The notes: generated from the letters alone by a model not told the origin. 64,000 bases of DNA from Octopus sinensis (GCF_006345805.1 NC_042997.1:69192001-69256000); one strand, 5' to 3'. Shown: positions 5,945 to 55,052, numbered from the stretch's first letter. Made by a program: numbers and translations.

Positions 5945-8062
5945 GTTAGTTAGTTAGTTAGTTAATTTGGCTCAAAAGCAAATAGCAAGGCCATGTAGGG
6001 GGACATGGAGTTAAGTACAGGGTGGTGTTCATGTAAAGAGTTCAGGCCACTTGAGGTCCAGGGAGGCTTTGAACAAAGCAGTCGTCGGCATCTTCACCAT
6101 CTCGTCTGGCAGCTTGTTCCACGGATCCGCAACCCGGACGGAGAAAGCTCCTCTCCTTCGATTGAGATGAAATCGTCGCAGGTAGAGCTTTTCGGAATGA
6201 CCCCGCAGCCGACGCTCCGGAGCAGGAGTGAAGAACAGCTCTTTCGAGAGGTTACACTTCCCGCTTATGATGTTGTGGGCGAGAATGAGATCACCACGGC
6301 GGCGGCGTTTTTCAAGAGAACAAAGGTCGAGCGTCCTCAGCCTTTCTTCGTAGGACAATTTTTGAGACCATGAACCATGCGGGTAGCCAGCCTCTGGACT
6401 CTTTCGAGGTGCTGTATGTCTTTGAGGAGATAAAGAGAAGAGGCTTGAATCCCATACTCCAATATGGGTCTCACCAGCGTGACATAGAGTGGCAGGAATA
6501 TGGCTGCTGTGAGCATTCCGAATGACCGTCGAATCAAAAACAGAATTCCGCGCGCTTTGTTGGCAGCATGGACGCACTGGACCGAAGGCGAAAAGGAGGA
6601 ATCCACTAAGATACCCAGGTCCTTTACCTGATCGGTCCTCTCCAGCAGCAGACGACCCGGCTCGAAATCAAGTTGAGTTGCAGGAGTAGAGCCGACAGGC
6701 AGATGACAGCACTTTGACACGTTCAGACACAGGTCCCAATTGTTAGACCACTTCCAAATTTGGTGGAGGCATCGACGAAGATCCTCTATACTACCGCGAG
6801 GAGCGACCAGTTTGATATCGTCGGCAAATAGAAGGGTGTGTTGCGTGAGGTCGTCGGGCAAGTCATTTATGAAGACTAAGAACAACAAGGGCCCAAGCAC
6901 TGAACCTTGAGGCACGCCACTGCTCGCACTGGAGACGTCGGACCGCGAACCATTAACTTGAACTTGGAAGGAGCGATCTGAGAGGAAGGCACCAACCCAT
7001 CGTACAATATCCGGATGGAAACTATATGCTTGAAGCTTGACAAGTAGTAGGCGGTGGTTTACCGAGTCAAAAGCTTTGGCAAAGTCCAATAAAACGATGT
7101 CAACAGCATCACTATCATCGAGGATGCGCGTCACCAATTCTTCCATTACTAGTAAGTTGGTCAAGCATGATCTCTTCGGCACGAAGCCGTGTTGGGAATC
7201 AGTGATCGAGGCTGTGTTTAGGAGGTGGAGCATCATACTTTTCTTAAGGATGGTTTCGAACATCTTGCTGATTATTGATGTAAGGGAAACCGGTCGGTAG
7301 TTAAGCGGGTCTTCGCGGCTCCCTTTCTTGAAAATTGGGCAGATTATCGCTGTTCTCCAGTCTGCAGGTATAACACCCGTCGCCAATGACATATTGAATA
7401 GTCGTGTTAAGGGCTCGCAGATGACCGGAGCCAACGCTTTGATAACCCGTGGGTGTATGCCGTCAGGGCCGTGACCCTTGTTGACATCGAGGCCTTGAAC
7501 AACACGTTTGACTTGGTCCCGCGTGATGATCAATCGAAGCATTGGAGGTACCGATCTATCAAATGGAGGGGGTTCACGACCATCATCTTGTTTGAAAATA
7601 GTTGAAAAAGCCTCGGCAAATAATTGACTCTGTTGATAAGGGTCCTCAATCGATACGCCTGTTGAGTCTACCAACGTTGCAATCTGGTTGTTCAAGCGGG
7701 AATTCCGCTGGACATGGGCAAAGAAGGATTTTGGATTGCTACTGGCATTTGCCGCGATTTTGTATTCATAACTGAAGCGTTCTTTCTTTTCAATTTTCAC
7801 GGCTCGGTCTCGTTGAGTTTTGTACACCTCAAAAGCTGCAGTCGAATCCAGATTTTTGAATTCAGCCCAAGCAATATCTCTGAGTCGACGTTCTCGTTTA
7901 ACCTTCTTCGTCACCCAGGGCTTGTGTTTCTTCCTCTTGGGAAGTCCAACGGGAACTGCCTGGTCAGTCAAACAGATTACATATGCTTTGAGGGATGACC
8001 ATAGTTCGTCAACTGAGGACAACGTCATCAGGGAACGCCAGTCCAGAAGCGCGGAAGCCTTT
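5945..8062 (-). mobile_element. 5'-truncated CR1-type LINE with (AACT)n 3' tail
   Basis: RT ORF on minus strand; TTAG repeats at 5945-5965 form the 3' tail. The sequence is visibly more GC-rich than its flanks. The endonuclease domain is absent and the element starts near the DW linker motif. Confidence 0.92.
6029..8028 (-). pseudogene. Non-LTR reverse transcriptase (ORF2 remnant) with one frameshift at about 6359-6363
   Basis: Motifs GPDGIHP, NYRPVSLTS, QHGF, LDFAKAFDSV, GVPQGSVLGPLLF and LFADD. The CR1-type C-terminus LSYEERL..L.SLEKRR.RGDL...RGH...FSVRV...WNKLP continues in the 6029-6577 frame. The shift lies in an A5 run (MVHGLKN / LSYEER). Confidence 0.93.
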
Positions 8063-26249: not shown

Positions 26250-26285
<36 letters not shown>

Positions 26286-26408
26286 GTGATGACGATGATA
26301 ATTCTGGTGGTAGCGATGGTGGGGACTATGGATGTTATCCAACTTATAGCGATAATTTGAAAAGATTTGATGCTTTTAGTGCAGTTTTGCGGTAGTAGTA
26401 GTAGTAGT

Positions 26409-26466
<58 letters not shown>

Positions 26467-26559
26467 CGCGGTGGTGGTGGTGGTGGTGGTGGTGGTGGTG
26501 GTGGCGGCGGTGGTGGTGGTGGTGGTGGGTTTGGAGGAGGAGGAGGAGGAGGAGGTTGC

Positions 26560-26590
<31 letters not shown>

Positions 26591-26977
26591 TTGGTTGTGG
26601 TTGTGGTGGTGCTGGTCTTTACGGAAATGGCAAGGGGATAGCGTGGTTGTTGTCCTATTAATAAAGGTGATGATGTTGGCGAGGTTAGTAGAGGCAGTAA
26701 GGATCGTCAGTAGTTGTAGTACTAATTCTAGTAGTAGTAGCAGCAGCAGCAGCAGCTAGTGTTAGCAACAGTTATAATGATAGGTGTAACTGAAGTGGTG
26801 TAGTGGTTGTAATTGACGAGGACGACGACGACGATGATGATGATGATGGGAGGGTACTAAGTCCTGTCTGTAGCACTCTATAGTAATAGTTGCGGCAGTG
26901 ATACGCACAGTGGTCCTGGTGGTGGTGGTGGCGATGGTGGAAGTGATTATGGGATGTAGAGGACGACGTCGGTAGTG

Positions 26978-27052
<75 letters not shown>

Positions 27053-27162
27053 ATTTGTGGTAGTGGTTGTTGATGTAGGGTTACAGTGGTAGTGAGGGTG
27101 TTGATCGTATGAATGATAATGAGTGTGAGTGAGATGGCGGTGAGAGAGAGGAAACAATAATA

Positions 27163-27195
<33 letters not shown>

Positions 27196-27240
27196 GAAGG
27201 AAGGAAGGAAGGAAGGAAGGAAGGAAGGAAGGAAGAGAGA
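26228..27240. repeat. Compound simple-repeat field upstream of pappalysin: (GAT)n, (TAG)n, (GGT)n, (GGA)n, (GAAA)n/(GGAA)n
   Basis: Directly visible. Confidence 0.95.
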
Positions 27241-28289
27241 AAGAGAGAATTAAAGGAAGAAGCAAGCGCACGTAAAAAAAAAGAATTACAATACAATACA
27301 GGCGGAGGGAAGACGAGAGAAAAATAATACAAAAACAAAACAAAAGACCGACAGAGAAAAATAAAATAAAATAAAATAAGGAGAAATATATTATACGAAG
27401 AAAGAAGGAGAAAGAAGATGAAAAAAAGAAAGGAAAACTGAAAAGAAAAGAAGAAAAGGAAGCATATGTTCCGTGGTGAGAAGAAGGCTGACTTTTCATG
27501 ACACTCGGAGACTCGAGCGTGTAAACTACCTTTAGAATGTGCAGAGTGGGAAACCAGCACTGCTCTGTCCGGAATAATGGGTCGACAGCAACTAAACCGG
27601 CGGTAATAATGGTCTCTCTGCTCCAACAGCAACAGCATAGGCGACGACGGAATACCCACCCCAACTGCCGCCGATACAACAATATTCACCACCGATACCA
27701 TCGACGGCGGCGGCGGCGTCGACGACGACGAAGACGATGGCGACGCACACGGCCAAGACGCTATCGCCACCACCATCATCACCACAATCATTATTACCAT
27801 CATCACCACCACCACTGCAACCATCGCTTTCATCGCCACTACTACAACTACCACCAAGTTCACCGCCCCCTGTGCCGCCACCGCCGCTACCATCGGCGCC
27901 AACATAGGAACGACCACCGACATCACCATAGTCATTACCGATATCAATACAATCATCACCGCTGTCATCACGACTTCCACAGTCTCCATCACCACCACCA
28001 TCACCAGCAGCAACAAGAGCAACAAAAACAACAACAACAACAAGCAAAACAATATTTTCATCGTAGCCACCACCACCACTGTCACTGCCACTACCATAAA
28101 CACAGCCGAAAATACAATAACCACAACGACAACCACAAACACAATCACCATTACAACCTCAATCACAAGCAGGAGCAAAATCAACAACAACAACAACTGC
28201 AATCAAAATATTACCGTCATCAAAGACACTACCACAAACAGTACCAGCGTCAGCATCACCACCACCACCACCACCACCCTACTACAGCG

Positions 28290-31200
28290 ATGTGTTTCTT
28301 GGCAATAGTAGCTGTGGTGGCGGTGACGACGTCAGCGGCCGTCATCAGAGTACCTGTTCTACCGACGTCAACTTTACTACACTCTACTACTACTACTACT
28401 ACTACTACTATACCAACGACAACAAAAACTGCTAGTGCTACTACTGCAACCAATACTACCACTAATAATACTAATACCTATACTTCTATTACAACTTCTT
28501 CACCTACTATCGCTACCAGTGCGACTACTACAACTATTATTACTATTGATGCTGTTGTTGTCGTTGATGCTACAGGTGTTGAAAAGAAAACTGCTACAAA
28601 AACAACAGCTACTACTACTACTACTACTACTATCATCTCCACCACCACCACTACTGCAGCTACTACCAATACTAAAAAAAATACTACAACTTTTACTACT
28701 GAAAAGTCTACTGTTACCCCTACAGGAACTGGTAACATTATTATTACTACTGTTACATGTAATTCTAGTGAGACAATATCGTTTGCTGGCATTAATTTAC
28801 CGAAAAAAGCGGGTCTCACCTGTACTTCTACACCGTTAACTGGCGCGACATGTCCCACTACCGATCATATTAGCGCTACTGTTGCTGCTGTCGCTACCAC
28901 CACCACCTCTACCACTACCACCACCACCACCATCACCACCACCACCACCACCGCCACTACCACAACCACCACTACCACCACCACCACCACTACTACTACT
29001 ACTGGTTCAGCCAATGGAATGAATGATGATGATGATGGGAATAAGATTACCAATTCTCATGCTAACGTTTCTAATATTACTGTTATCTTTCTCAAAGCAA
29101 CTTCTATCAAATGGAATTGGAATTATATTGTTAAAAGTTCTTTCATGTATAACTACAATGTTACAAAGAGGGATACATGTTTTAAGCTGTCAAATTTCTT
29201 TAATGAATTTATTGACAGGAAAGAAATCAAAGAGAGTGGAAAGTTTGTTGAGTTCAAAATGTGTTCCGATTACTGTCGTATGATGGAGGAAATATTGTCA
29301 AAAAATGCAGTTCGGACAAGAAATTCTTACCTGGCGTCCACAAAAATGTCGATTCGCAAGATACCAGATTCGGTATTGATGGAAGATTGGAAAATGAAAC
29401 GAGAATCACAGTCAGATGGAGATGGATTCCTTGATAACGAGAGATATACAACAAAAACTCACTGGAGGGGCATTAAGAATTTACTCGAAATATATAAGAT
29501 AACTGGATTAAAAAACTCAGAATCATCTCAATCGTATAAGTGGAAAACTGTCGACTGCTGGGGGCGAATACTTGAAACGAAACATATAGCATTAGTAGAT
29601 CGCTCAGAAAGTCATCATGGAAACACAATAATCGTCAAAAAACTATTGCATGGATGGACCAATGATATAACTTGTAACACGACACGAACATTCAATGAGT
29701 CGAAAAATATTACTTTTCCGTTATTGCAACAATGTTTAAAAAGATGGCCGACCCAAAAGCAATTAAAAAGAATGCGTGGATTACATTACATAGAATGTCA
29801 AGATGTAGTTGATGACCATGTGTTGTTTATAAAATACCACAAAGTATCCTCGAAGAAATATTTTGTTACAAAAATTACTCCTTTAAGAAATCCTAGTTAT
29901 GGACATTGGATTAATTGTAAAGACAAAGTTAAAATAATCCAATTACTTAAGATAGACCGATCCATTGTTTCTTCACATGACAATCAGAAGAAATTAAGAA
30001 ATGAGGGGAAATTGGAACACGAAAGTACTTCACATACACTGTCTGCATCAAATTCTGATGATAAAAATAATAAGCAATCACAAGCATTTAATAAAAAGTA
30101 CCCTCACTGGAATAAGACAAATGCCATCAGAAAAGTGATCAATTTTGGAAATTGTCTTGTGAGAGTCAAAGATTCGAAGGACTATCTTGATGTTGAAACT
30201 AAAATCTTTAGAAATTCAAATAACAAAATTCTGAAAATCTGTTTTCAAGATAGAGGAAGTCATAAAGAAGGATTACTTGTGGAAAGTAACCAGTTTTGGA
30301 CACTATCAAATGGAAATAAAAAGAATCACACTGAAAAATGGAATTATGGAAACTTGGTCCATTCTGTGGCTATTTCTTCAAAGGACGTGAAAGATGGTGG
30401 CACGCGTAATGTTATATGCAACAGCTGTGATAAGAGTAATGCCGGTGATGATGTAAAAGATGTAGAGGAGAGAAATTTTGGAAAATTTAGAGAATCAAGG
30501 GTTCCGAGAAGTGCTACTGAAAGTAAACATAGTCAAAAATATTACGGGATTTCTGAGAGAATGAAATATTTTAGATTTAAAGATATATATTTCACTGACC
30601 AGGTAACTAAACAAAACTATGAAACTACTCACAGAAACAATACTTTCAGAATAAACTCGAGAACAGTATGCAGATTTAATGAAAACGCAACGTTTTACAA
30701 CATCCGCTTGAATAAGAATTTTTCTTCGCGTAATGAAACTGGATTTTACCAGGGTGATGAAAATATTTTTTACAACAAATACGATCACGACATGCATAAG
30801 CATAGACATAAGGATATGAATGACACAAGTACATACTGGATTGATTATGCACAGTACAAGGAAGAAGAACGATATAACAGACTTATGAAATCATTGCATC
30901 TGCAATACCTTCCAGATTATCATTATGAACAGGAAGAACACAAAGGTGACTTTTATAGTGAACAAGACAGCGGGGTTCCAAAATATTTTATCGAAAGACA
31001 ACGACTCCAAGATTCAGAAGGAAACTATCCGCATCATAGGACACCCAAGAAAAAGAACAAACCCTGCGGGAATCACGGCCGATATCCAAAGCGCACAGGA
31101 GGATTGAAAAATCTTATTCATCATCCACAACAATATATAGAACCGATGCACACATCCAGAGGCATACGAGTTCGGTACGCACGAGATGTCAGACAATCGT

Positions 31201-31392
31201 CATCTACAGCTTCACTATTTCCCGGATATGGTTTCGGAAATGCAGCGTACTTTTCTGGAAACAGACAACTTTTGCAACTAAAGTTAAAAAGAAAATATGG
31301 AATGTCAAAATCTATGATTCCAAGGCAACAATTTACCATTGAGTTCTGGATGAAACCCGAAGGAGGGCAACATAATCCTACCGTTATTATTG
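28290..31392 (+). CDS. PAPPA: Pappalysin (PAPP-A-like metzincin), first coding exon: signal peptide, Thr-rich tract, long pro-region, furin site, start of the LamG-like domain
   Basis: C-terminal AAYFSGNRQLLQLK...IPRQQFTIEFWMKPEGGQHNPTVIIG matches, as I recall it, human PAPP-A ALYFSGRGEQLRLR...LPRDAFTLQVWLRAEGGQRSPAVITG. RVRYAR at 31167-31184 precedes it, as RQQR does in human. The exon ends at a phase-1 G|GTGAGT at the equivalent Gly. The start is inferred from the hydrophobic MCFLAIVAVVAVTTSA at ATG 28290 and is less certain than the 3' end. PAPPA versus PAPPA2 orthology is unresolved. Confidence 0.85.
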
Positions 31393-31398
31393 GTGAGT
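31393..31398 (+). other. 5' splice donor of pappalysin intron 1; no exon 2 found in the window
   Basis: ATTATTG|GTGAGT, a consensus donor, with an in-frame TAA immediately after. Confidence 0.88.
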
Positions 31399-31733
31399 AA
31401 AACAACATTGTATATTATTTTAGACTTGCATATGCATATTGTCTCGTAATATATTATATATATATAAAACGTGACGGGATGCGTGTATACACCATTGAAC
31501 AGGCCGAAAAGGGTTGAAATAATTAGTTAATTAGATGAAAAGTATAAAATTACACTTTTTTCCAGTTCTCAAAGCATTTCTTATATTTTTATTCACATAT
31601 ATAAATTTATTGTTGTGAAAACTCTTAACATTTTCGATATATAATAAGTGGTAACTCGTTAAGGGGCGAGCGGACAGCGGGAGAAATCTTCCAATGAATG
31701 ATTCCCGTCAAACAGGTGCATCTGAAACTAAGG

Positions 31734-32353: not shown

Positions 32354-32409
<56 letters not shown>

Positions 32410-32410
32410 G

Positions 32411-32475
<65 letters not shown>

Positions 32476-32542
32476 GTACATACATACATGTATATTATAA
32501 ATATATATGCATATTATATTTATATATATTCGTAATATATAT

Positions 32543-32593
<51 letters not shown>

Positions 32594-32911
32594 TTGCGTG
32601 TATATCTATATGAGCGTATATGCATGTGTGTACGAATGCATGCATCTATGTATACATGTGTATGTTTATATACATATGTGTGTATGTATGTGTGTGTGTG
32701 TGCGCGCGCGCGTGTGTATATATATATGTTTGGGCACGCACGTGCAGAGGTTGTTGTGTAGTTGTTCATATAAGTGAGCATGATTAGGAAATGATTGTAG
32801 ACACGTTGTTCCGTGTAGTTTTGTTTGTATCGTATTTACATTGTATACAAATTTTTATATGCATAAGTTAGTTTATTGTATTTTAGTATTTACATAATTA
32901 TATATGGAATA

Positions 32912-32949
<38 letters not shown>

Positions 32950-32950
32950 C

Positions 32951-33028
<78 letters not shown>

Positions 33029-33077
33029 GTCTCTCTCTCTATCTATCTATCTATCTATCTAACTATCTATCTATCTA

Positions 33078-33110
<33 letters not shown>

Positions 33111-33152
33111 CTATGCATACCTATATACGTAAGTATGTATACATACATATCC

Positions 33153-33197
<45 letters not shown>

Positions 33198-33473
33198 TAT
33201 ACATGCATATATTTATAAGACTGTATTCATGGAAATATACGTAAATATATACATCTACACACACGCTCACACATGCATGCATTACTTAAACATTTGTAAG
33301 ATATCTCATTATGATGAGGCATCTTTAAATGCAAGAAACAGTGAACGGATCAAGCTCTTTTATTATAAACAAATTAAAATATGATGTATAAAATGTCTCA
33401 TTGTTATGAGACAACCTGTATACTATAAGTGCGCTTGTGTGAGTGTGTGCATTATAATATGTATATGCGTATG

Positions 33474-33512
<39 letters not shown>

Positions 33513-33524
33513 ACATATATATAT

Positions 33525-33583
<59 letters not shown>

Positions 33584-33956
33584 TATAATATATAAATCCT
33601 TAAATCCTTAAAAATGTTTTAGCCCGAAGGCCGCGCCCATGCTGGGGCACCACCGCGGAATGAGCTACACTAGTTTGTGAATCCACCTCTGATACGTAGC
33701 ACTTGATCAACAAGGGATTCGATGCTGGCTGCCCGCATCCGTGTCTCCTGTCGGGAGGTAGGTTCATCTGGGACTCCCAACAAGAAGAGATCCAGTTTAG
33801 TTTTAAAGAAACCCACATCCACACCATGTAAGTCTCTCAGGCATTTAGGGAGATGTTAAGGCTGTGGTCCTCGAAACCCAAGCTGTTGCAGTATCTGGAC
33901 CTGTATTTTGATGGTGATGTTGGATATATATATATACATCCATATACACACACATG

Positions 33957-50679: not shown

Positions 50680-51892
50680 TTGGGCCATCCCATAAATAAT
50701 GCGGTTTTTTTAATCTTTAACTTCCAAATTAGGATAAACAAATATTTTAAATCTAAAATATATTCTACAATGCTCTTCCATGTGTCTGGTTGACTTGAAG
50801 ACCCCTCTTCCAAAATTCACTTGTCCGTGACGAAAAGTACTCCTCCACTACTATTTTGACCTCGTCTACAGAATTCATATTTTTTCCGTCCAAATGATTT
50901 TGAAGATTGCGGAATATAATAATCAGATGGGGCAATGTCCGGCGAATGTGGTGGATGGGGCATCGTCTCCCATTTAAACTGCTCTAGCCTTTGGAATGTC
51001 ATTCTCGCTGTATGTGGCCGAGCAGTAACCTGATGGAAGAACACCTTTCGTTTTGAAACCAAAGATGGTCGTTTTTCTTCTAGCGATGACTTAAGCCGCA
51101 CAGGCTGCTCGCAGTAGATCTCCTTTGTTAACGTGTGTTTAGGTTTTAAATGTTCAAAGTGAACTAAACCTTTCACATCCCACCAAACAGATAGCAGCAT
51201 CTTACGTAGGTGAAGACGTTCTTTAGCCTGGGGTGCCGGTGTTTCTCCTTTCTCACTGACTTCATTTTTTTAGGAGAACCCATTTATCGCCACCAGCCAC
51301 TATTCGGTCCAAAAAAAAAAAAAGGTTCATTCGTCAGACGTGACAGCAAAGAAGAGTACACATTCATTCTCCGCGAGCGATTAGACTCAGAAAATTTGTG
51401 AGGAACCAATTCACCCAATTTGCTGACTTTTCTTATGGTACGCATTTGTCGATGAATGGTTGACTGACCAAATCCAAGCTTCTCTGCTCAACAGTTACGA
51501 TGGGATTTTGCTCCACCAGGGTTTGCAGGACGTCCTCGTCGAGCTCTACATATCTTCCTGGATAAGGTTCAGTTTCTGGCTCGGAATTTCTGGAACCACC
51601 GTTGACACTGTCCGATCCCCATATACTGCATTAATATTCCTCGCACTTTCCGTTGAGCTGATGCCTTTATTGAACTCATAAAGCAATATATGCCGGATAT
51701 GCTCCTTTGTCACTTCCATTATAGCTTTGAAAAGTAACTGTTAAAACCGAACTGCACACTTTACTAAGAATAAGTATAAAGGCAAAATCACTACCTACTT
51801 TTATAGGAAGTTGATGCAAGTAGTTATCCCGTGTCCTTCCGATTCGTAGTACATGCCATTGAAAAAACCGCATTATATATGGGATGACCCAA
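50680..51892 (-). mobile_element. Mariner (Tc1/mariner) element, degraded transposase
   Basis: TIRs TTGGGCCATCCCATAAATAATGCGGTTTTTT / TTGGGTCATCCCATATATAATGCGGTTTTTT with TA on both sides. MEVTKEHIRHILLYEF at ATG 51719; MLLSVWWDVKG and HPPHSPDIAPSDY motifs. Confidence 0.93.
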
Positions 51893-53788: not shown

Positions 53789-55052
53789 CGAGGGATGTTC
53801 ATTAAAGATTTCTTCTGTCCCACTTTCCAAGGACTGAGATTAACGAAACTTTACATAATTATTAGCCCTTCTCTGCATAGCCACCACCAATGGTGACACA
53901 CTTCTCACATCGCTTTATGCAGCTGTGAAGGCCTCGTCTGTAGAAGTTGGTAGGTTGCGTCTGGAGCCCAGACTTTACCTCGGTAATAAGCTCGTCACCA
54001 TCCGAAAAGTGTTTCCTCTACAAAAAAGACTTCATGTTTGGCAAGATGTGGAAGTCAGATGTGCGAGGTCGGGAGAGAAAGTGGGATGAGGAAGGATTTC
54101 ATAGACGCAGGAGTGTGCTTCCATCTAGGTAACATGCGCATTGTGAACTGGGGCGTTGCCTTGGAGGAGGCGGACTCTTTTGGTCAGCATGCCACGCCTC
54201 TCTGCTTTGCTGGCATTCCGCAATTTCTGTAGCAGAGAAGCAATGCCCCATTAATTTTGTTGCCCGTCTGCCAGAAAATCCATTATCACTAATCCGCGTT
54301 GGTCCAAAAATACTGTATCATCTTACATGATGAAGGTTGGCCACGAGCCTCCTTTGGAAGTGGTGAGTTATCATGGTTCCATTGCTTCGACTGGACTTTA
54401 CTCTCAGGATCATAGTGATGGACCCATGTTTCAACCTGTCTGATAAGTCTGCCAAAAAAGCCCTCCTTGATTTCTTGGCACATTGCCAAAAGAGACTGGG
54501 AGCAATTGATTCTGAAAAGGTGTGAGCATTTAGGGAATACATCGGGCAGACAATTTCCGCACGTGCAAATAATCGTGAATTACTTTTTCCACGGACCCTA
54601 CACTTACCTTCACTTCTTGGGCTAGTTGTTGAATAGTTATGCGGCGATCTTCCAAAACGGCAGATTCCAGTTTATGTATGGTGTCGTCATCAATGACGGA
54701 ATGTGGTCGTTCAGGAATAGGAGCAATTTCCACCGGTGTCCGACCACATTTGAACTATTGATGCCAGTGCTTGACGACGACGTATAATGGTGCATCATTG
54801 CCATAAACTTGTTTCATCTCATCGAAAGTCTCTTTTGGTGTACGACGTTTCAAGTATAACAACATGATCACTGATCTGCATTCAACTGCCTCCATTATAT
54901 CTTAGTCCACTTGAGGAACCGAAAAGACGAAGGAATACAAATGGAAAGCTACAATTTACAATGTGACTTGTAGAGACAGGTATAATTATACCTGTTCAAG
55001 TTCCATGTCCTGCAGTAGTGTGTCAGCGGAAATTTTTAATGAACACTCCTCA
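53789..55052 (-). mobile_element. Second mariner element, degraded transposase
   Basis: Imperfect TIRs CGAGGGATGTTCATTAAAGATTTC / TGAGGAGTGTTCATTAAAAATTTC. MEAVECR at ATG 54895; DRRITIQQLA, ETWVHHYDPESK and SPDFTS motifs. Confidence 0.9.

What the first reader, a model, noticed from the sequence alone, without database searches (positions are those of the whole stretch)
28290..31184. Pappalysin with a ~965-residue prepro-region encoded in one 3.1-kb exon
Seen: 965 codons from ATG 28290 to the RVRYAR site, stop-free and mostly non-repetitive after 29030. The region has at least 15 N-x-S/T sequons and many cysteines, consistent with a secreted glycoprotein. Established: human PAPP-A has an 80-aa prepro piece and PAPP-A2 about 230 aa; both cleave IGFBPs and control IGF availability. 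Inference: a roughly 4- to 12-fold lineage-specific expansion that may be an inhibitory, tethering or separately released polypeptide, in an animal whose insulin-binding proteins differ from vertebrate IGFBPs.
Basis: partly seen in the sequence, partly recalled or inferred. Interest (0 to 1): 0.7.

Follow-up and report, generated by a model that had tools for sequence, protein, structure and literature searches.

The report
Pappalysin first exon with giant pro-region
This is the first coding exon of an invertebrate pappalysin protease whose removable leader has grown to about 965 residues; two related genomes share the inflated leader, but only its last ~45 residues are conserved, so most of it looks like weakly constrained filler.

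Summary
From ATG 28290 to RVRYAR (ends 31184) there are 965 stop-free codons. Chance of no stop in the non-repetitive 718 codons is about 1e-26. The exon ends at a GTGAGT donor at 31393, so its last base is 31392, not 31397.

The last ~50 residues match the start of the pappalysin laminin-G domain. No other pappalysin exon lies in the window.

Two other genomes (taxa unknown, probably cephalopods) carry the same kind of exon. Their leaders are 1142 and 1146 residues, with the same order of parts and the same donor phase. Most other exon-1 ORFs found have leaders of roughly 25-100 residues. A gastropod (Pomacea) has ~400, unrelated in sequence.

The ~680-residue middle has no detectable similarity to those relatives, no Pfam domain, no repeats and no confident fold. 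Between the two relatives it evolves at dN/dS ~0.5.

Conserved parts are the N-terminal hydrophobic signal, an invariant KPCGNHGR block, and the R-x-x-R|D cleavage site.

Best reading: a tolerated, glycosylated, mostly disordered insertion between the signal peptide and an ancestral short pro-segment. It stays in frame because the protease needs the distant signal peptide. A tether, inhibitor or second-product role is untested.

Verdict: a new variant of a known kind, of moderate-to-low interest.

The parts
27537..28289 (+). In-frame upstream extension of the ORF through His/Arg/Gln low-complexity DNA. Probably 5' UTR or promoter-proximal repeat, not coding.
   Evidence: Four of the other five frames have only 1-8 stops here. 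The relatives L001 and L002 have a stop 1-9 codons upstream of their start Met.
28290..28343 (+). Start codon and N-terminal hydrophobic segment (MCFLAIVAVVAVTTSAAV). Candidate signal peptide, or possibly a signal anchor.
   Evidence: It is one of only two hydrophobic stretches in the 1036-aa ORF; the second, weaker one (aa 78-97) lies inside the Thr-rich tract. An N-terminal segment is the only such stretch in L001 and L002, at the equivalent place. Max Kyte-Doolittle 3.25-3.3. It resembles L001 CLAHVAMTIMIAITS. No SignalP run was possible.
28344..29030 (+). Thr-rich (44% T across aa 1-247), mucin-like low-complexity region with 4 sequons. It includes (ACC)n arrays at 28896-29002.
   Evidence: L001 and L002 have a T/S/A/N-rich, sequon-rich region at the same place.
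29031..31058 (+). Middle pro-region, aa 248-923. It is Lys/Asn/Ser-rich, hydrophilic (GRAVY -1.01) and non-repetitive, with 13 sequons and 13 non-conserved Cys. No homolog, domain or fold was found.
   Evidence: 0 stops versus 30-81 in the other frames. Pfam found nothing. hhalign against the L001+L002 profile gave probability 0.2%. No self-repeats. No other copy in the window or loci. AF2 mean pLDDT 29.6. Charge-hydropathy places it on the disordered side.
31059..31184 (+). Conserved ancestral pro-segment core, aa 924-965. It holds the invariant KPCGNHGR block (31059-31082) and ends in the basic cleavage site RVRYAR (31167-31184), cut before Asp966.
   Evidence: BLASTP against P0002 gives 53% identity from aa 924 onward, E 1e-35. 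Invariant columns are listed. R-x-x-R is conserved in 16 sequences. Site and Cys survey.
31185..31392 (+). First ~69 residues of the mature pappalysin chain (start of the laminin-G-like domain), up to the exon end in phase 1.
   Evidence: PDB PAPP-A2 8sl1 E 2.8e-5, and PAPP-A entries. Pomacea XP_025112425.1 gave E 1e-10, and that annotated model runs straight on past the point where the window match ends (aa 492...AVIVG|LSD...).
31393..31398 (+). Splice donor GTGAGT of intron 1. The in-frame TAA at 31398-31400 is intronic.
   Evidence: The same phase-1 G|GTRAG donor occurs in L001-L004.

Best explanation
The region is the first coding exon of an invertebrate pappalysin (invPAPP-A-type metalloprotease) gene.

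The encoded precursor runs in this order:
1. An N-terminal signal peptide.
2. A ~230-residue Thr-rich, probably O-glycosylated tract.
3. A ~680-residue hydrophilic Lys/Asn/Ser-rich stretch that is largely disordered and evolves fast.
4. A conserved ~42-residue ancestral pro-segment (KPCGNHGR ... RVRYAR).
5. The mature enzyme, beginning with its laminin-G-like domain.

A furin-type proprotein convertase most likely cuts after Arg965 (R-x-x-R|D) in the secretory pathway and removes the whole leader.

The bulk of the leader is best read as a tolerated insertion between the signal peptide and the ancestral short pro-segment. Repeat slippage ((ACC)n) and AT-biased drift probably inflated it. It stays open because any stop or frameshift would disconnect the protease from its only signal peptide.

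The specific function lies in the short conserved core. That core may hold the enzyme latent until cleavage.

Shown: the ORF, the pappalysin identity, the conserved architecture, site and donor, and the weak constraint. Inferred: convertase cleavage, glycosylation, disorder and the passenger status of the middle.
For: - The ORF is statistically real.
- Its end is the pappalysin LG start.
- Two independent genomes (L001 from an ENA assembly, L002 from a Logan assembly) carry exon-1 ORFs with leaders of 1142 and 1146 aa. They have the same order of parts and the same phase-1 donor. A stop codon lies just upstream of their hydrophobic N-terminus.
- The N-terminal segment is the only hydrophobic stretch in L001 and L002, and the stronger of two in the window ORF; none lies near the conserved core. 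Secretion of the protease therefore requires translation of the whole ORF.
- No acceptor-like sites and no second donor lie inside the ORF.
- L001 versus L002: 144 gap columns, all in frame. dN/dS is 0.45-0.59 in the leader, 0.26 in the core and 0.11 in the LG start.
- The window's middle region is not alignable to them. It has no Pfam domain, no repeats and no other copy, AF2 pLDDT below 50 throughout, and lies on the disordered side of the charge-hydropathy plot.
- KPCGNHGR is invariant, and R-x-x-R|D is conserved across many exon-1 ORFs.
- Short leaders elsewhere show the core plus signal peptide is the ancestral state (PMC11925022).
Against: - No transcript, CAGE or proteomic data could be consulted, so the start codon and exon continuity are inferred.
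- dN/dS of ~0.5 is below 1, so the leader is not evolving fully neutrally. Some property is under selection: solubility, glycosylation, length, or a real function.
- Length and architecture are retained in three genomes, which could mean the extension is useful.
- Single-sequence AlphaFold is a weak test of disorder.
- The taxa of the window, L001 and L002 are unknown. One ancestral expansion cannot be told apart from parallel ones.
Confidence: 0.6

Rival explanations
1. The expanded leader is a functional module. After convertase cleavage it would persist as a separate secreted mucin-like glycoprotein. Alternatively, before cleavage it would act as a long inhibitory or tethering arm for the protease.
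For: The length (965-1146 aa) and the order of parts are kept in three genomes. dN/dS is ~0.5 rather than ~1. There are a Thr-rich tract and 13-17 sequons.
Against: The middle regions show no detectable sequence conservation between the window and the relatives. There are no conserved Cys, no domain, no repeats and no confident fold. Sequons are not enriched over composition. ORF retention is explained by the position of the signal peptide alone.
Confidence: 0.2
2. The N-terminal hydrophobic segment is an uncleaved signal anchor. The precursor would then be a type II membrane protein on a glycosylated stalk, and convertase cleavage would shed the active protease.
For: The hydrophobic stretch is 17-19 residues long, with no clear polar c-region in L001 and L002. 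In the window the frame is open upstream with in-frame ATGs at 27537 and 27609, which could add a cytoplasmic tail.
Against: L001 and L002 have a stop just upstream, leaving only 8-9 residues before the hydrophobic stretch. That is typical of a signal peptide. TTS-AA in the window fits a small-residue cleavage site. No predictor could be run.
Confidence: 0.1
3. Most of the ORF is not translated as part of the pappalysin. The real mRNA would use another first exon or an internal start close to the KPCG core, and the long open frame would be incidental or belong to another product.
For: No RNA evidence was available. The low-complexity parts (27537-29030) are open in several frames. The collection holds no gene model for this genome.
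Against: 676 non-repetitive codons without a stop (P ~1e-26). The same continuous frame in two other genomes with only in-frame indels and dN/dS below 1. No internal hydrophobic signal near the core. No acceptor-like site in the ORF. The annotated Pomacea pappalysin-1-like model contains its long leader (P0019) in one product with the rest of the protein.
Confidence: 0.08

Closest known systems
Human PAPP-A2 (pappalysin-2) prepro-region, the longest characterised pappalysin leader (234 aa; mature chain from residue 235, PMC11925022)
   Same: It is an N-terminal leader removed before the laminin-G-like domain. The mature N-terminus aligns with window aa 986-1035. The leader is poorly conserved and has no assigned function.
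   Different: It is about four times shorter. It has no Thr-rich tract. The PAPP-A2-like exon-1 ORFs found here (P0024, P0028) lack the R-x-x-R site at the equivalent distance, and the script listed no Cys motif for them.
Invertebrate PAPP-A (invPAPP-A; Kjeldsen and Oxvig 2025, PMC11925022), for example Branchiostoma belcheri with an ~80-aa leader, and the short exon-1 ORFs P0003-P0023
   Same: The same gene family, the same conserved R-[HY]-[PA]-R|D site, often a Cys about 20 aa upstream, and the same exon-1 donor position.
   Different: Their leaders are roughly 25-100 aa. Here about 880 extra residues sit between the signal peptide and the conserved core.
Pomacea canaliculata pappalysin-1-like XP_025112425.1 (2050 aa; exon-1 ORF P0019)
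   Same: A mollusc pappalysin with an enlarged leader (~400-425 aa) in one first exon. The annotated model runs on past the point where the window's exon ends.
   Different: The leader is Gln/Arg/Ser/Ala-rich and has no similarity to the window or to L001/L002. It has no KPCG motif. It appears to be an independent expansion.
Pro-segment of unicellular pappalysins (mirolysin, ulilysin): the Arg21-Thr-Cys23-Gly24 cysteine switch, 31 residues before the activation site (PMC6949598)
   Same: The window has Lys924-Pro-Cys926-Gly927, invariant in the three long-leader genes. It lies 35-40 residues before the basic activation site. The pattern is the same: basic residue, any residue, Cys, Gly.
   Different: In animal pappalysins a ~240-residue LG domain lies between the cleavage site and the catalytic domain. 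Zinc binding by this Cys is untested. Most other animal leaders have Cys-Thr or Cys-Ser rather than Cys-Gly.

Membership tests
Animal pappalysins (PAPP-A / PAPP-A2 / invPAPP-A, metzincin family M43B) | The laminin-G-like domain begins directly after the pro-region | tested here: met
   Window aa 986-1035 align to PAPP-A2 8sl1 residues 29-73 (E 2.8e-5) and to PAPP-A entries. Pomacea pappalysin-1-like gives E 1e-10. Only the first ~50-70 residues of the domain lie in the window.
Animal pappalysins (PAPP-A / PAPP-A2 / invPAPP-A, metzincin family M43B) | Catalytic domain with the HEXXHXXGXXH zinc motif and Met-turn | not testable with these tools
   No further pappalysin exon lies in the 32.6 kb downstream. 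The rest of the gene is outside the window.
Animal pappalysins (PAPP-A / PAPP-A2 / invPAPP-A, metzincin family M43B) | LNR modules and five SCR modules in the conserved order | not testable with these tools
   Outside the window.
Animal pappalysins (PAPP-A / PAPP-A2 / invPAPP-A, metzincin family M43B) | Basic proprotein-convertase-type site immediately before the mature N-terminus | tested here: met
   R962-Y-A-R965|D. The two Arg columns are invariant or at least 90% conserved in the 16-sequence alignment A3. The motif recurs in 23 of the 29 exon-1 ORFs examined.
Animal pappalysins (PAPP-A / PAPP-A2 / invPAPP-A, metzincin family M43B) | Exon 1 ends in phase 1 in the Gly after PEGGQxxPxxIxG | tested here: met
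   G|GTGAGT at 31392/31393. The same position occurs in L001-L004. The annotated Pomacea protein runs on past this point, aa 492.
Cysteine-switch pro-segment of unicellular pappalysins (mirolysin/ulilysin) | Basic-x-Cys-Gly motif in the pro-segment | tested here: met
   K924-P-C926-G927, inside the invariant KPCGNHGR block of the three long-leader ORFs. The mirolysin motif is R21-T-C23-G24 (PMC6949598).
Cysteine-switch pro-segment of unicellular pappalysins (mirolysin/ulilysin) | Cys about 31 residues upstream of the activation cleavage | tested here: inconclusive
   35-40 residues here, and about 19-22 in most short animal leaders.
Cysteine-switch pro-segment of unicellular pappalysins (mirolysin/ulilysin) | Pro-segment directly precedes the catalytic domain and its Cys ligates the catalytic zinc | tested here: not met
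   The residue after the cleavage site starts the LG domain, not the catalytic domain. Zinc ligation itself is not testable here.
Mucin-like (PTS) domain | Very high Thr/Ser content over more than 100 residues | tested here: met
   T 44% and S 7% in aa 1-247.
Mucin-like (PTS) domain | Pro-rich with tandem peptide repeats | tested here: not met
   Pro is only 3%. The repeats are simple (ACC)n arrays rather than peptide-unit repeats.

The most novel reading that the evidence does not exclude
The conserved core of the leader (K-P-C-G ... R-x-x-R|D) is a true cysteine-switch pro-segment inherited from the unicellular pappalysins. Animal pappalysins would then be made as latent zymogens. In this lineage the switch would be fused to a ~900-residue glycosylated stalk or anchor, holding the latent enzyme at the producing cell until a convertase releases it.
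Probability: 0.12. Interest if true: 0.65.

Novelty: new variant of a known kind. Interest (0 to 1): 0.35.

Why it matters
Pappalysins are studied as regulators of IGF availability and as drug targets. Their pro-regions have been almost ignored, and the 2025 survey of invertebrate pappalysins analysed mature chains only.

This locus shows that the leader can grow more than tenfold while a ~45-residue core and the cleavage site stay fixed. That marks the core, with its Cys, as the part worth testing for latency or folding.

It also gives a clear example of an ORF kept open by the position of a signal peptide rather than by its own sequence. That is useful as a caution for gene annotation and for dN/dS-based claims of function.

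Tried and rejected
- The search for homologous proteins with the non-repetitive exon product, with its conserved C-terminal 132 aa, and with the full Pomacea pappalysin. All three returned no hits, not even self-hits. That index does not reach these eukaryotic ORFs, so named cephalopod orthologs could not be retrieved.
- The look-up of encoding contigs with three start choices of the window ORF and with two transposon ORFs found nothing. The window's genome is not in the collection, so neither its taxon nor any transcripts could be obtained.
- Literature searches for the run and assembly accessions of L001-L004, and for pappalysin in octopus or cephalopods, found nothing. The supplement of PMC11925022 is not held.
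- Cluster look-ups gave names only for Pomacea and Branchiostoma.
- A Pfam scan of the exon product found nothing.
- Profile comparison and BLOSUM45 BLASTP of the middle region against L001/L002 were not significant.
- Single-sequence AlphaFold gave pLDDT 29.6, so no fold search was justified.
- Rfam and tRNA scans of the window found nothing.
- blastn of L001-L004 against the window gave only short matches of 34-116 bases, probably simple repeats.
- A transposon or duplicated-segment origin for the middle region was rejected. There is no other copy in the window and no transposon domain.

Full report
**1. Observation**

The + strand carries an ORF from 27537 to 31400. From the ATG at 28290 the translation runs 1036 codons. 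RVRYAR is aa 960-965, nt 31167-31184.

Over the non-repetitive part (29031-31184) the reading frame has no stop. The other five frames have 30-81 stops. Base composition predicts 57 stops in 718 codons, giving P(0) ~1e-26. The longest open run in 2000 shuffles was 149 codons. The ORF is therefore real.

The exon does not end at 31397. The donor GTGAGT begins at 31393, so the exon ends at 31392 in phase 1. The last Glu and the TAA are intron read-through.

There are 17 sequons and 18 Cys. The 13 sequons of the middle region do not exceed what composition gives (P = 0.08). At 1.7%, Cys is not 'many'.

Upstream of 28290 the frame stays open to 27537 through His/Arg/Gln low-complexity DNA. Four of the other five frames have only 1-8 stops there. 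The Thr-rich part contains (ACC)n arrays.

**2. Identity**

The last ~50 residues align with the N-terminus of mature PAPP-A2 (8sl1, E 2.8e-5) and with PAPP-A. That annotated Pomacea protein runs straight on past the point where the window match ends (aa 492).

No other pappalysin exon lies in the remaining 32.6 kb. Only exon 1 is in the window. The catalytic, LNR and SCR parts cannot be examined.

**3. Relatives**

A full HMMER scan of 1.84 billion representative proteins gave 28 hits, all to the C-terminal part of the query.

Two hits are ORFs of 1189 and 1204 aa (P0001 and P0002) that end with the same LG start. Their loci are L001 (ENA assembly ERZ21867824, 142-kb contig) and L002 (Logan assembly of ERR12921338). 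Both loci show the following:
- A stop codon 1-9 codons upstream of a Met.
- That Met is followed by a hydrophobic stretch (MYS..K..LAH.AMTIMI).
- A T/S/A/N-rich, sequon-rich region comes next.
- An ~800-aa Lys/Asn/Ser-rich region follows.
- Then comes the block KPCGNHGR.
- A basic site precedes DVR.
- The LG start and the same phase-1 G|GTRAG donor end the exon.

Their leaders are 1142 and 1146 aa, against 965 here.

The two relatives are 42% identical to each other along the whole ORF. Identity to the window is significant only from KPCGNHGR onward (53%, E 1e-35). The middle regions are not alignable: hhalign probability 0.2% and BLOSUM45 BLASTP E > 0.3.

The taxa of L001 and L002 could not be determined. 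The accessions match no paper, and the clusters carry no names. That they are cephalopods, and that the window is an octopus, remains an inference.

**4. How unusual is the length?**

In the other exon-1 ORFs the conserved site lies about 25-100 aa from the ORF start. In most of them the N-terminus is hydrophobic, like a signal peptide.

| Source | Leader length |
|---|---|
| Human PAPP-A | 81 aa (PMC11925022) |
| Human PAPP-A2 | 234 aa (PMC11925022) |
| Branchiostoma belcheri | 80 aa (PMC11925022) |
| PAPP-A2-like ORFs found here | ~230-270 aa |
| Pomacea | ~400-425 aa, no similarity to the long leaders |
| Window | 965 aa |
| L001, L002 | 1142 and 1146 aa |

Long leaders are therefore not general. 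The window's gene belongs to a small group with a roughly 10-fold expansion. A gastropod shows a smaller, apparently independent expansion at the same site.

**5. What is conserved, and what is not**

Conserved features:
1. The N-terminal hydrophobic segment. It is the stronger of only two such stretches in the window ORF and the only one in each relative.
2. The invariant KPCGNHGR block, 35-40 aa before the site.
3. The R-x-x-R|D site. It is invariant or nearly so in 16 aligned sequences and often reads R-[HY]-[PA]-R|D.
4. The LG start and the donor position.

A Cys lies ~19-22 aa upstream of the site in 13 of the 20 other ORFs in which a site was found.

Not conserved: the ~680-aa middle. 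Its properties:
- No Pfam match.
- No internal repeat, and no other copy in the window or loci.
- No confident AlphaFold structure. Mean pLDDT was 29.6 on a single sequence, which is a weak test.
- GRAVY -1.01.
- It lies on the disordered side of the charge-hydropathy boundary, most clearly from aa ~570 to 930.

Between L001 and L002, Nei-Gojobori dN/dS varies by segment:

| Segment | dN/dS |
|---|---|
| Leader | 0.45-0.59 |
| Conserved core | 0.26 |
| LG start | 0.11 |

dS was ~0.6-1.1 in the leader segments. All 144 gap columns are in frame.

**6. Mechanism**

No hydrophobic segment lies anywhere near the core; the candidate signal peptide is at the far N-terminus. Every stop or frameshift in the leader would therefore abolish secretion of the protease. 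This alone explains why ~1000 codons stay open while their sequence drifts.

No acceptor-like site or extra donor lies inside the ORF. That argues, weakly, against splicing into it.

I therefore read the bulk of the leader as a tolerated, glycosylated, mostly disordered insertion between the signal peptide and an ancestral short pro-segment. A furin-type convertase would remove it at R962-x-x-R965|D (inference from the motif and its conservation).

dN/dS near 0.5 and the retained length leave room for a generic role such as spacer, solubility or glycan display.

The K-P-C-G block has the same pattern as the R-T-C-G cysteine switch of mirolysin and ulilysin. There the Cys binds the catalytic zinc and the basic residue fills S1', 31 residues before the activation site (PMC6949598). 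In animal pappalysins an LG domain intervenes, so this is a lead and not a finding.

**7. Comparison and novelty**

The gene is a pappalysin by every feature that could be tested in the window. The catalytic features lie outside it.

The published survey of invertebrate pappalysins used mature chains only and does not mention propeptides or prepro-regions. No paper in the library links pappalysin with octopus.

The finding is a new variant of a known kind: an ordinary protease gene with an extraordinary, fast-evolving leader. Interest is moderate to low. The conserved Cys-containing core is the most testable spin-off.

**8. Limits**

- No RNA or protein data were available.
- Taxon assignment was not possible.
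- The word-indexed protein search returned nothing in all three attempts.
- The window's genome is absent from the contig index.

Noticed in passing
window 31059-31082 (KPCGNHGR), compared with P0005-P0027: A Cys ~19-22 aa upstream of the R-x-x-R activation site recurs in 13 of the 20 other pappalysin exon-1 ORFs in which a site was found. In the three long-leader genes it sits in K-P-C-G, the same pattern as the R-T-C-G cysteine switch of mirolysin. It is a possible latency motif in animal pappalysins.
   Followed up: partly
window 6337-8028 (-): A 563-aa ORF with a reverse-transcriptase domain (RVT_1, E 2e-32). It is a non-LTR retrotransposon copy and explains the local GC rise to 0.49.
   Followed up: partly
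window 50817-51200 (-) and 54289-54733 (-): Mariner/Tc1-like transposase fragments. The first has a Transposase_1 partial DDE domain (E 4e-13). The second has a weak helix-turn-helix ORF plus a typical mariner-like stretch. Both are broken copies.
   Followed up: partly
window 27537-28289 (+): A 251-codon in-frame His/Arg/Gln-rich extension lies upstream of the start, with in-frame ATGs at 27537 and 27609. Four of the other five frames have only 1-8 stops, so it is probably repeat DNA. If transcribed and translated, it would turn the signal peptide into an internal anchor.
   Followed up: partly
window 28896-29002 and flanks 26250-27261, 32354-33594: An (ACC)n array lies inside the coding Thr tract, and dense microsatellites (GTA, GGT, AAGA, TATC, AT) lie on both sides of the exon. 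The Thr tract is likely to be length-polymorphic.
   Followed up: no
P0019 / P0037 (Pomacea canaliculata): The gastropod pappalysin-1-like protein has a ~400-aa Gln/Arg/Ser/Ala-rich leader with no similarity to the long leaders studied here. The site between the signal peptide and the pro-segment core seems repeatedly permissive for expansion.
   Followed up: partly
L001 9932-13567 and L002 425-4072: The two relatives share a strongly conserved island inside the leader (HDFFLDPEFEKKRLERKV, with an acidic run just before it). It has no counterpart in the window's leader.
   Followed up: no
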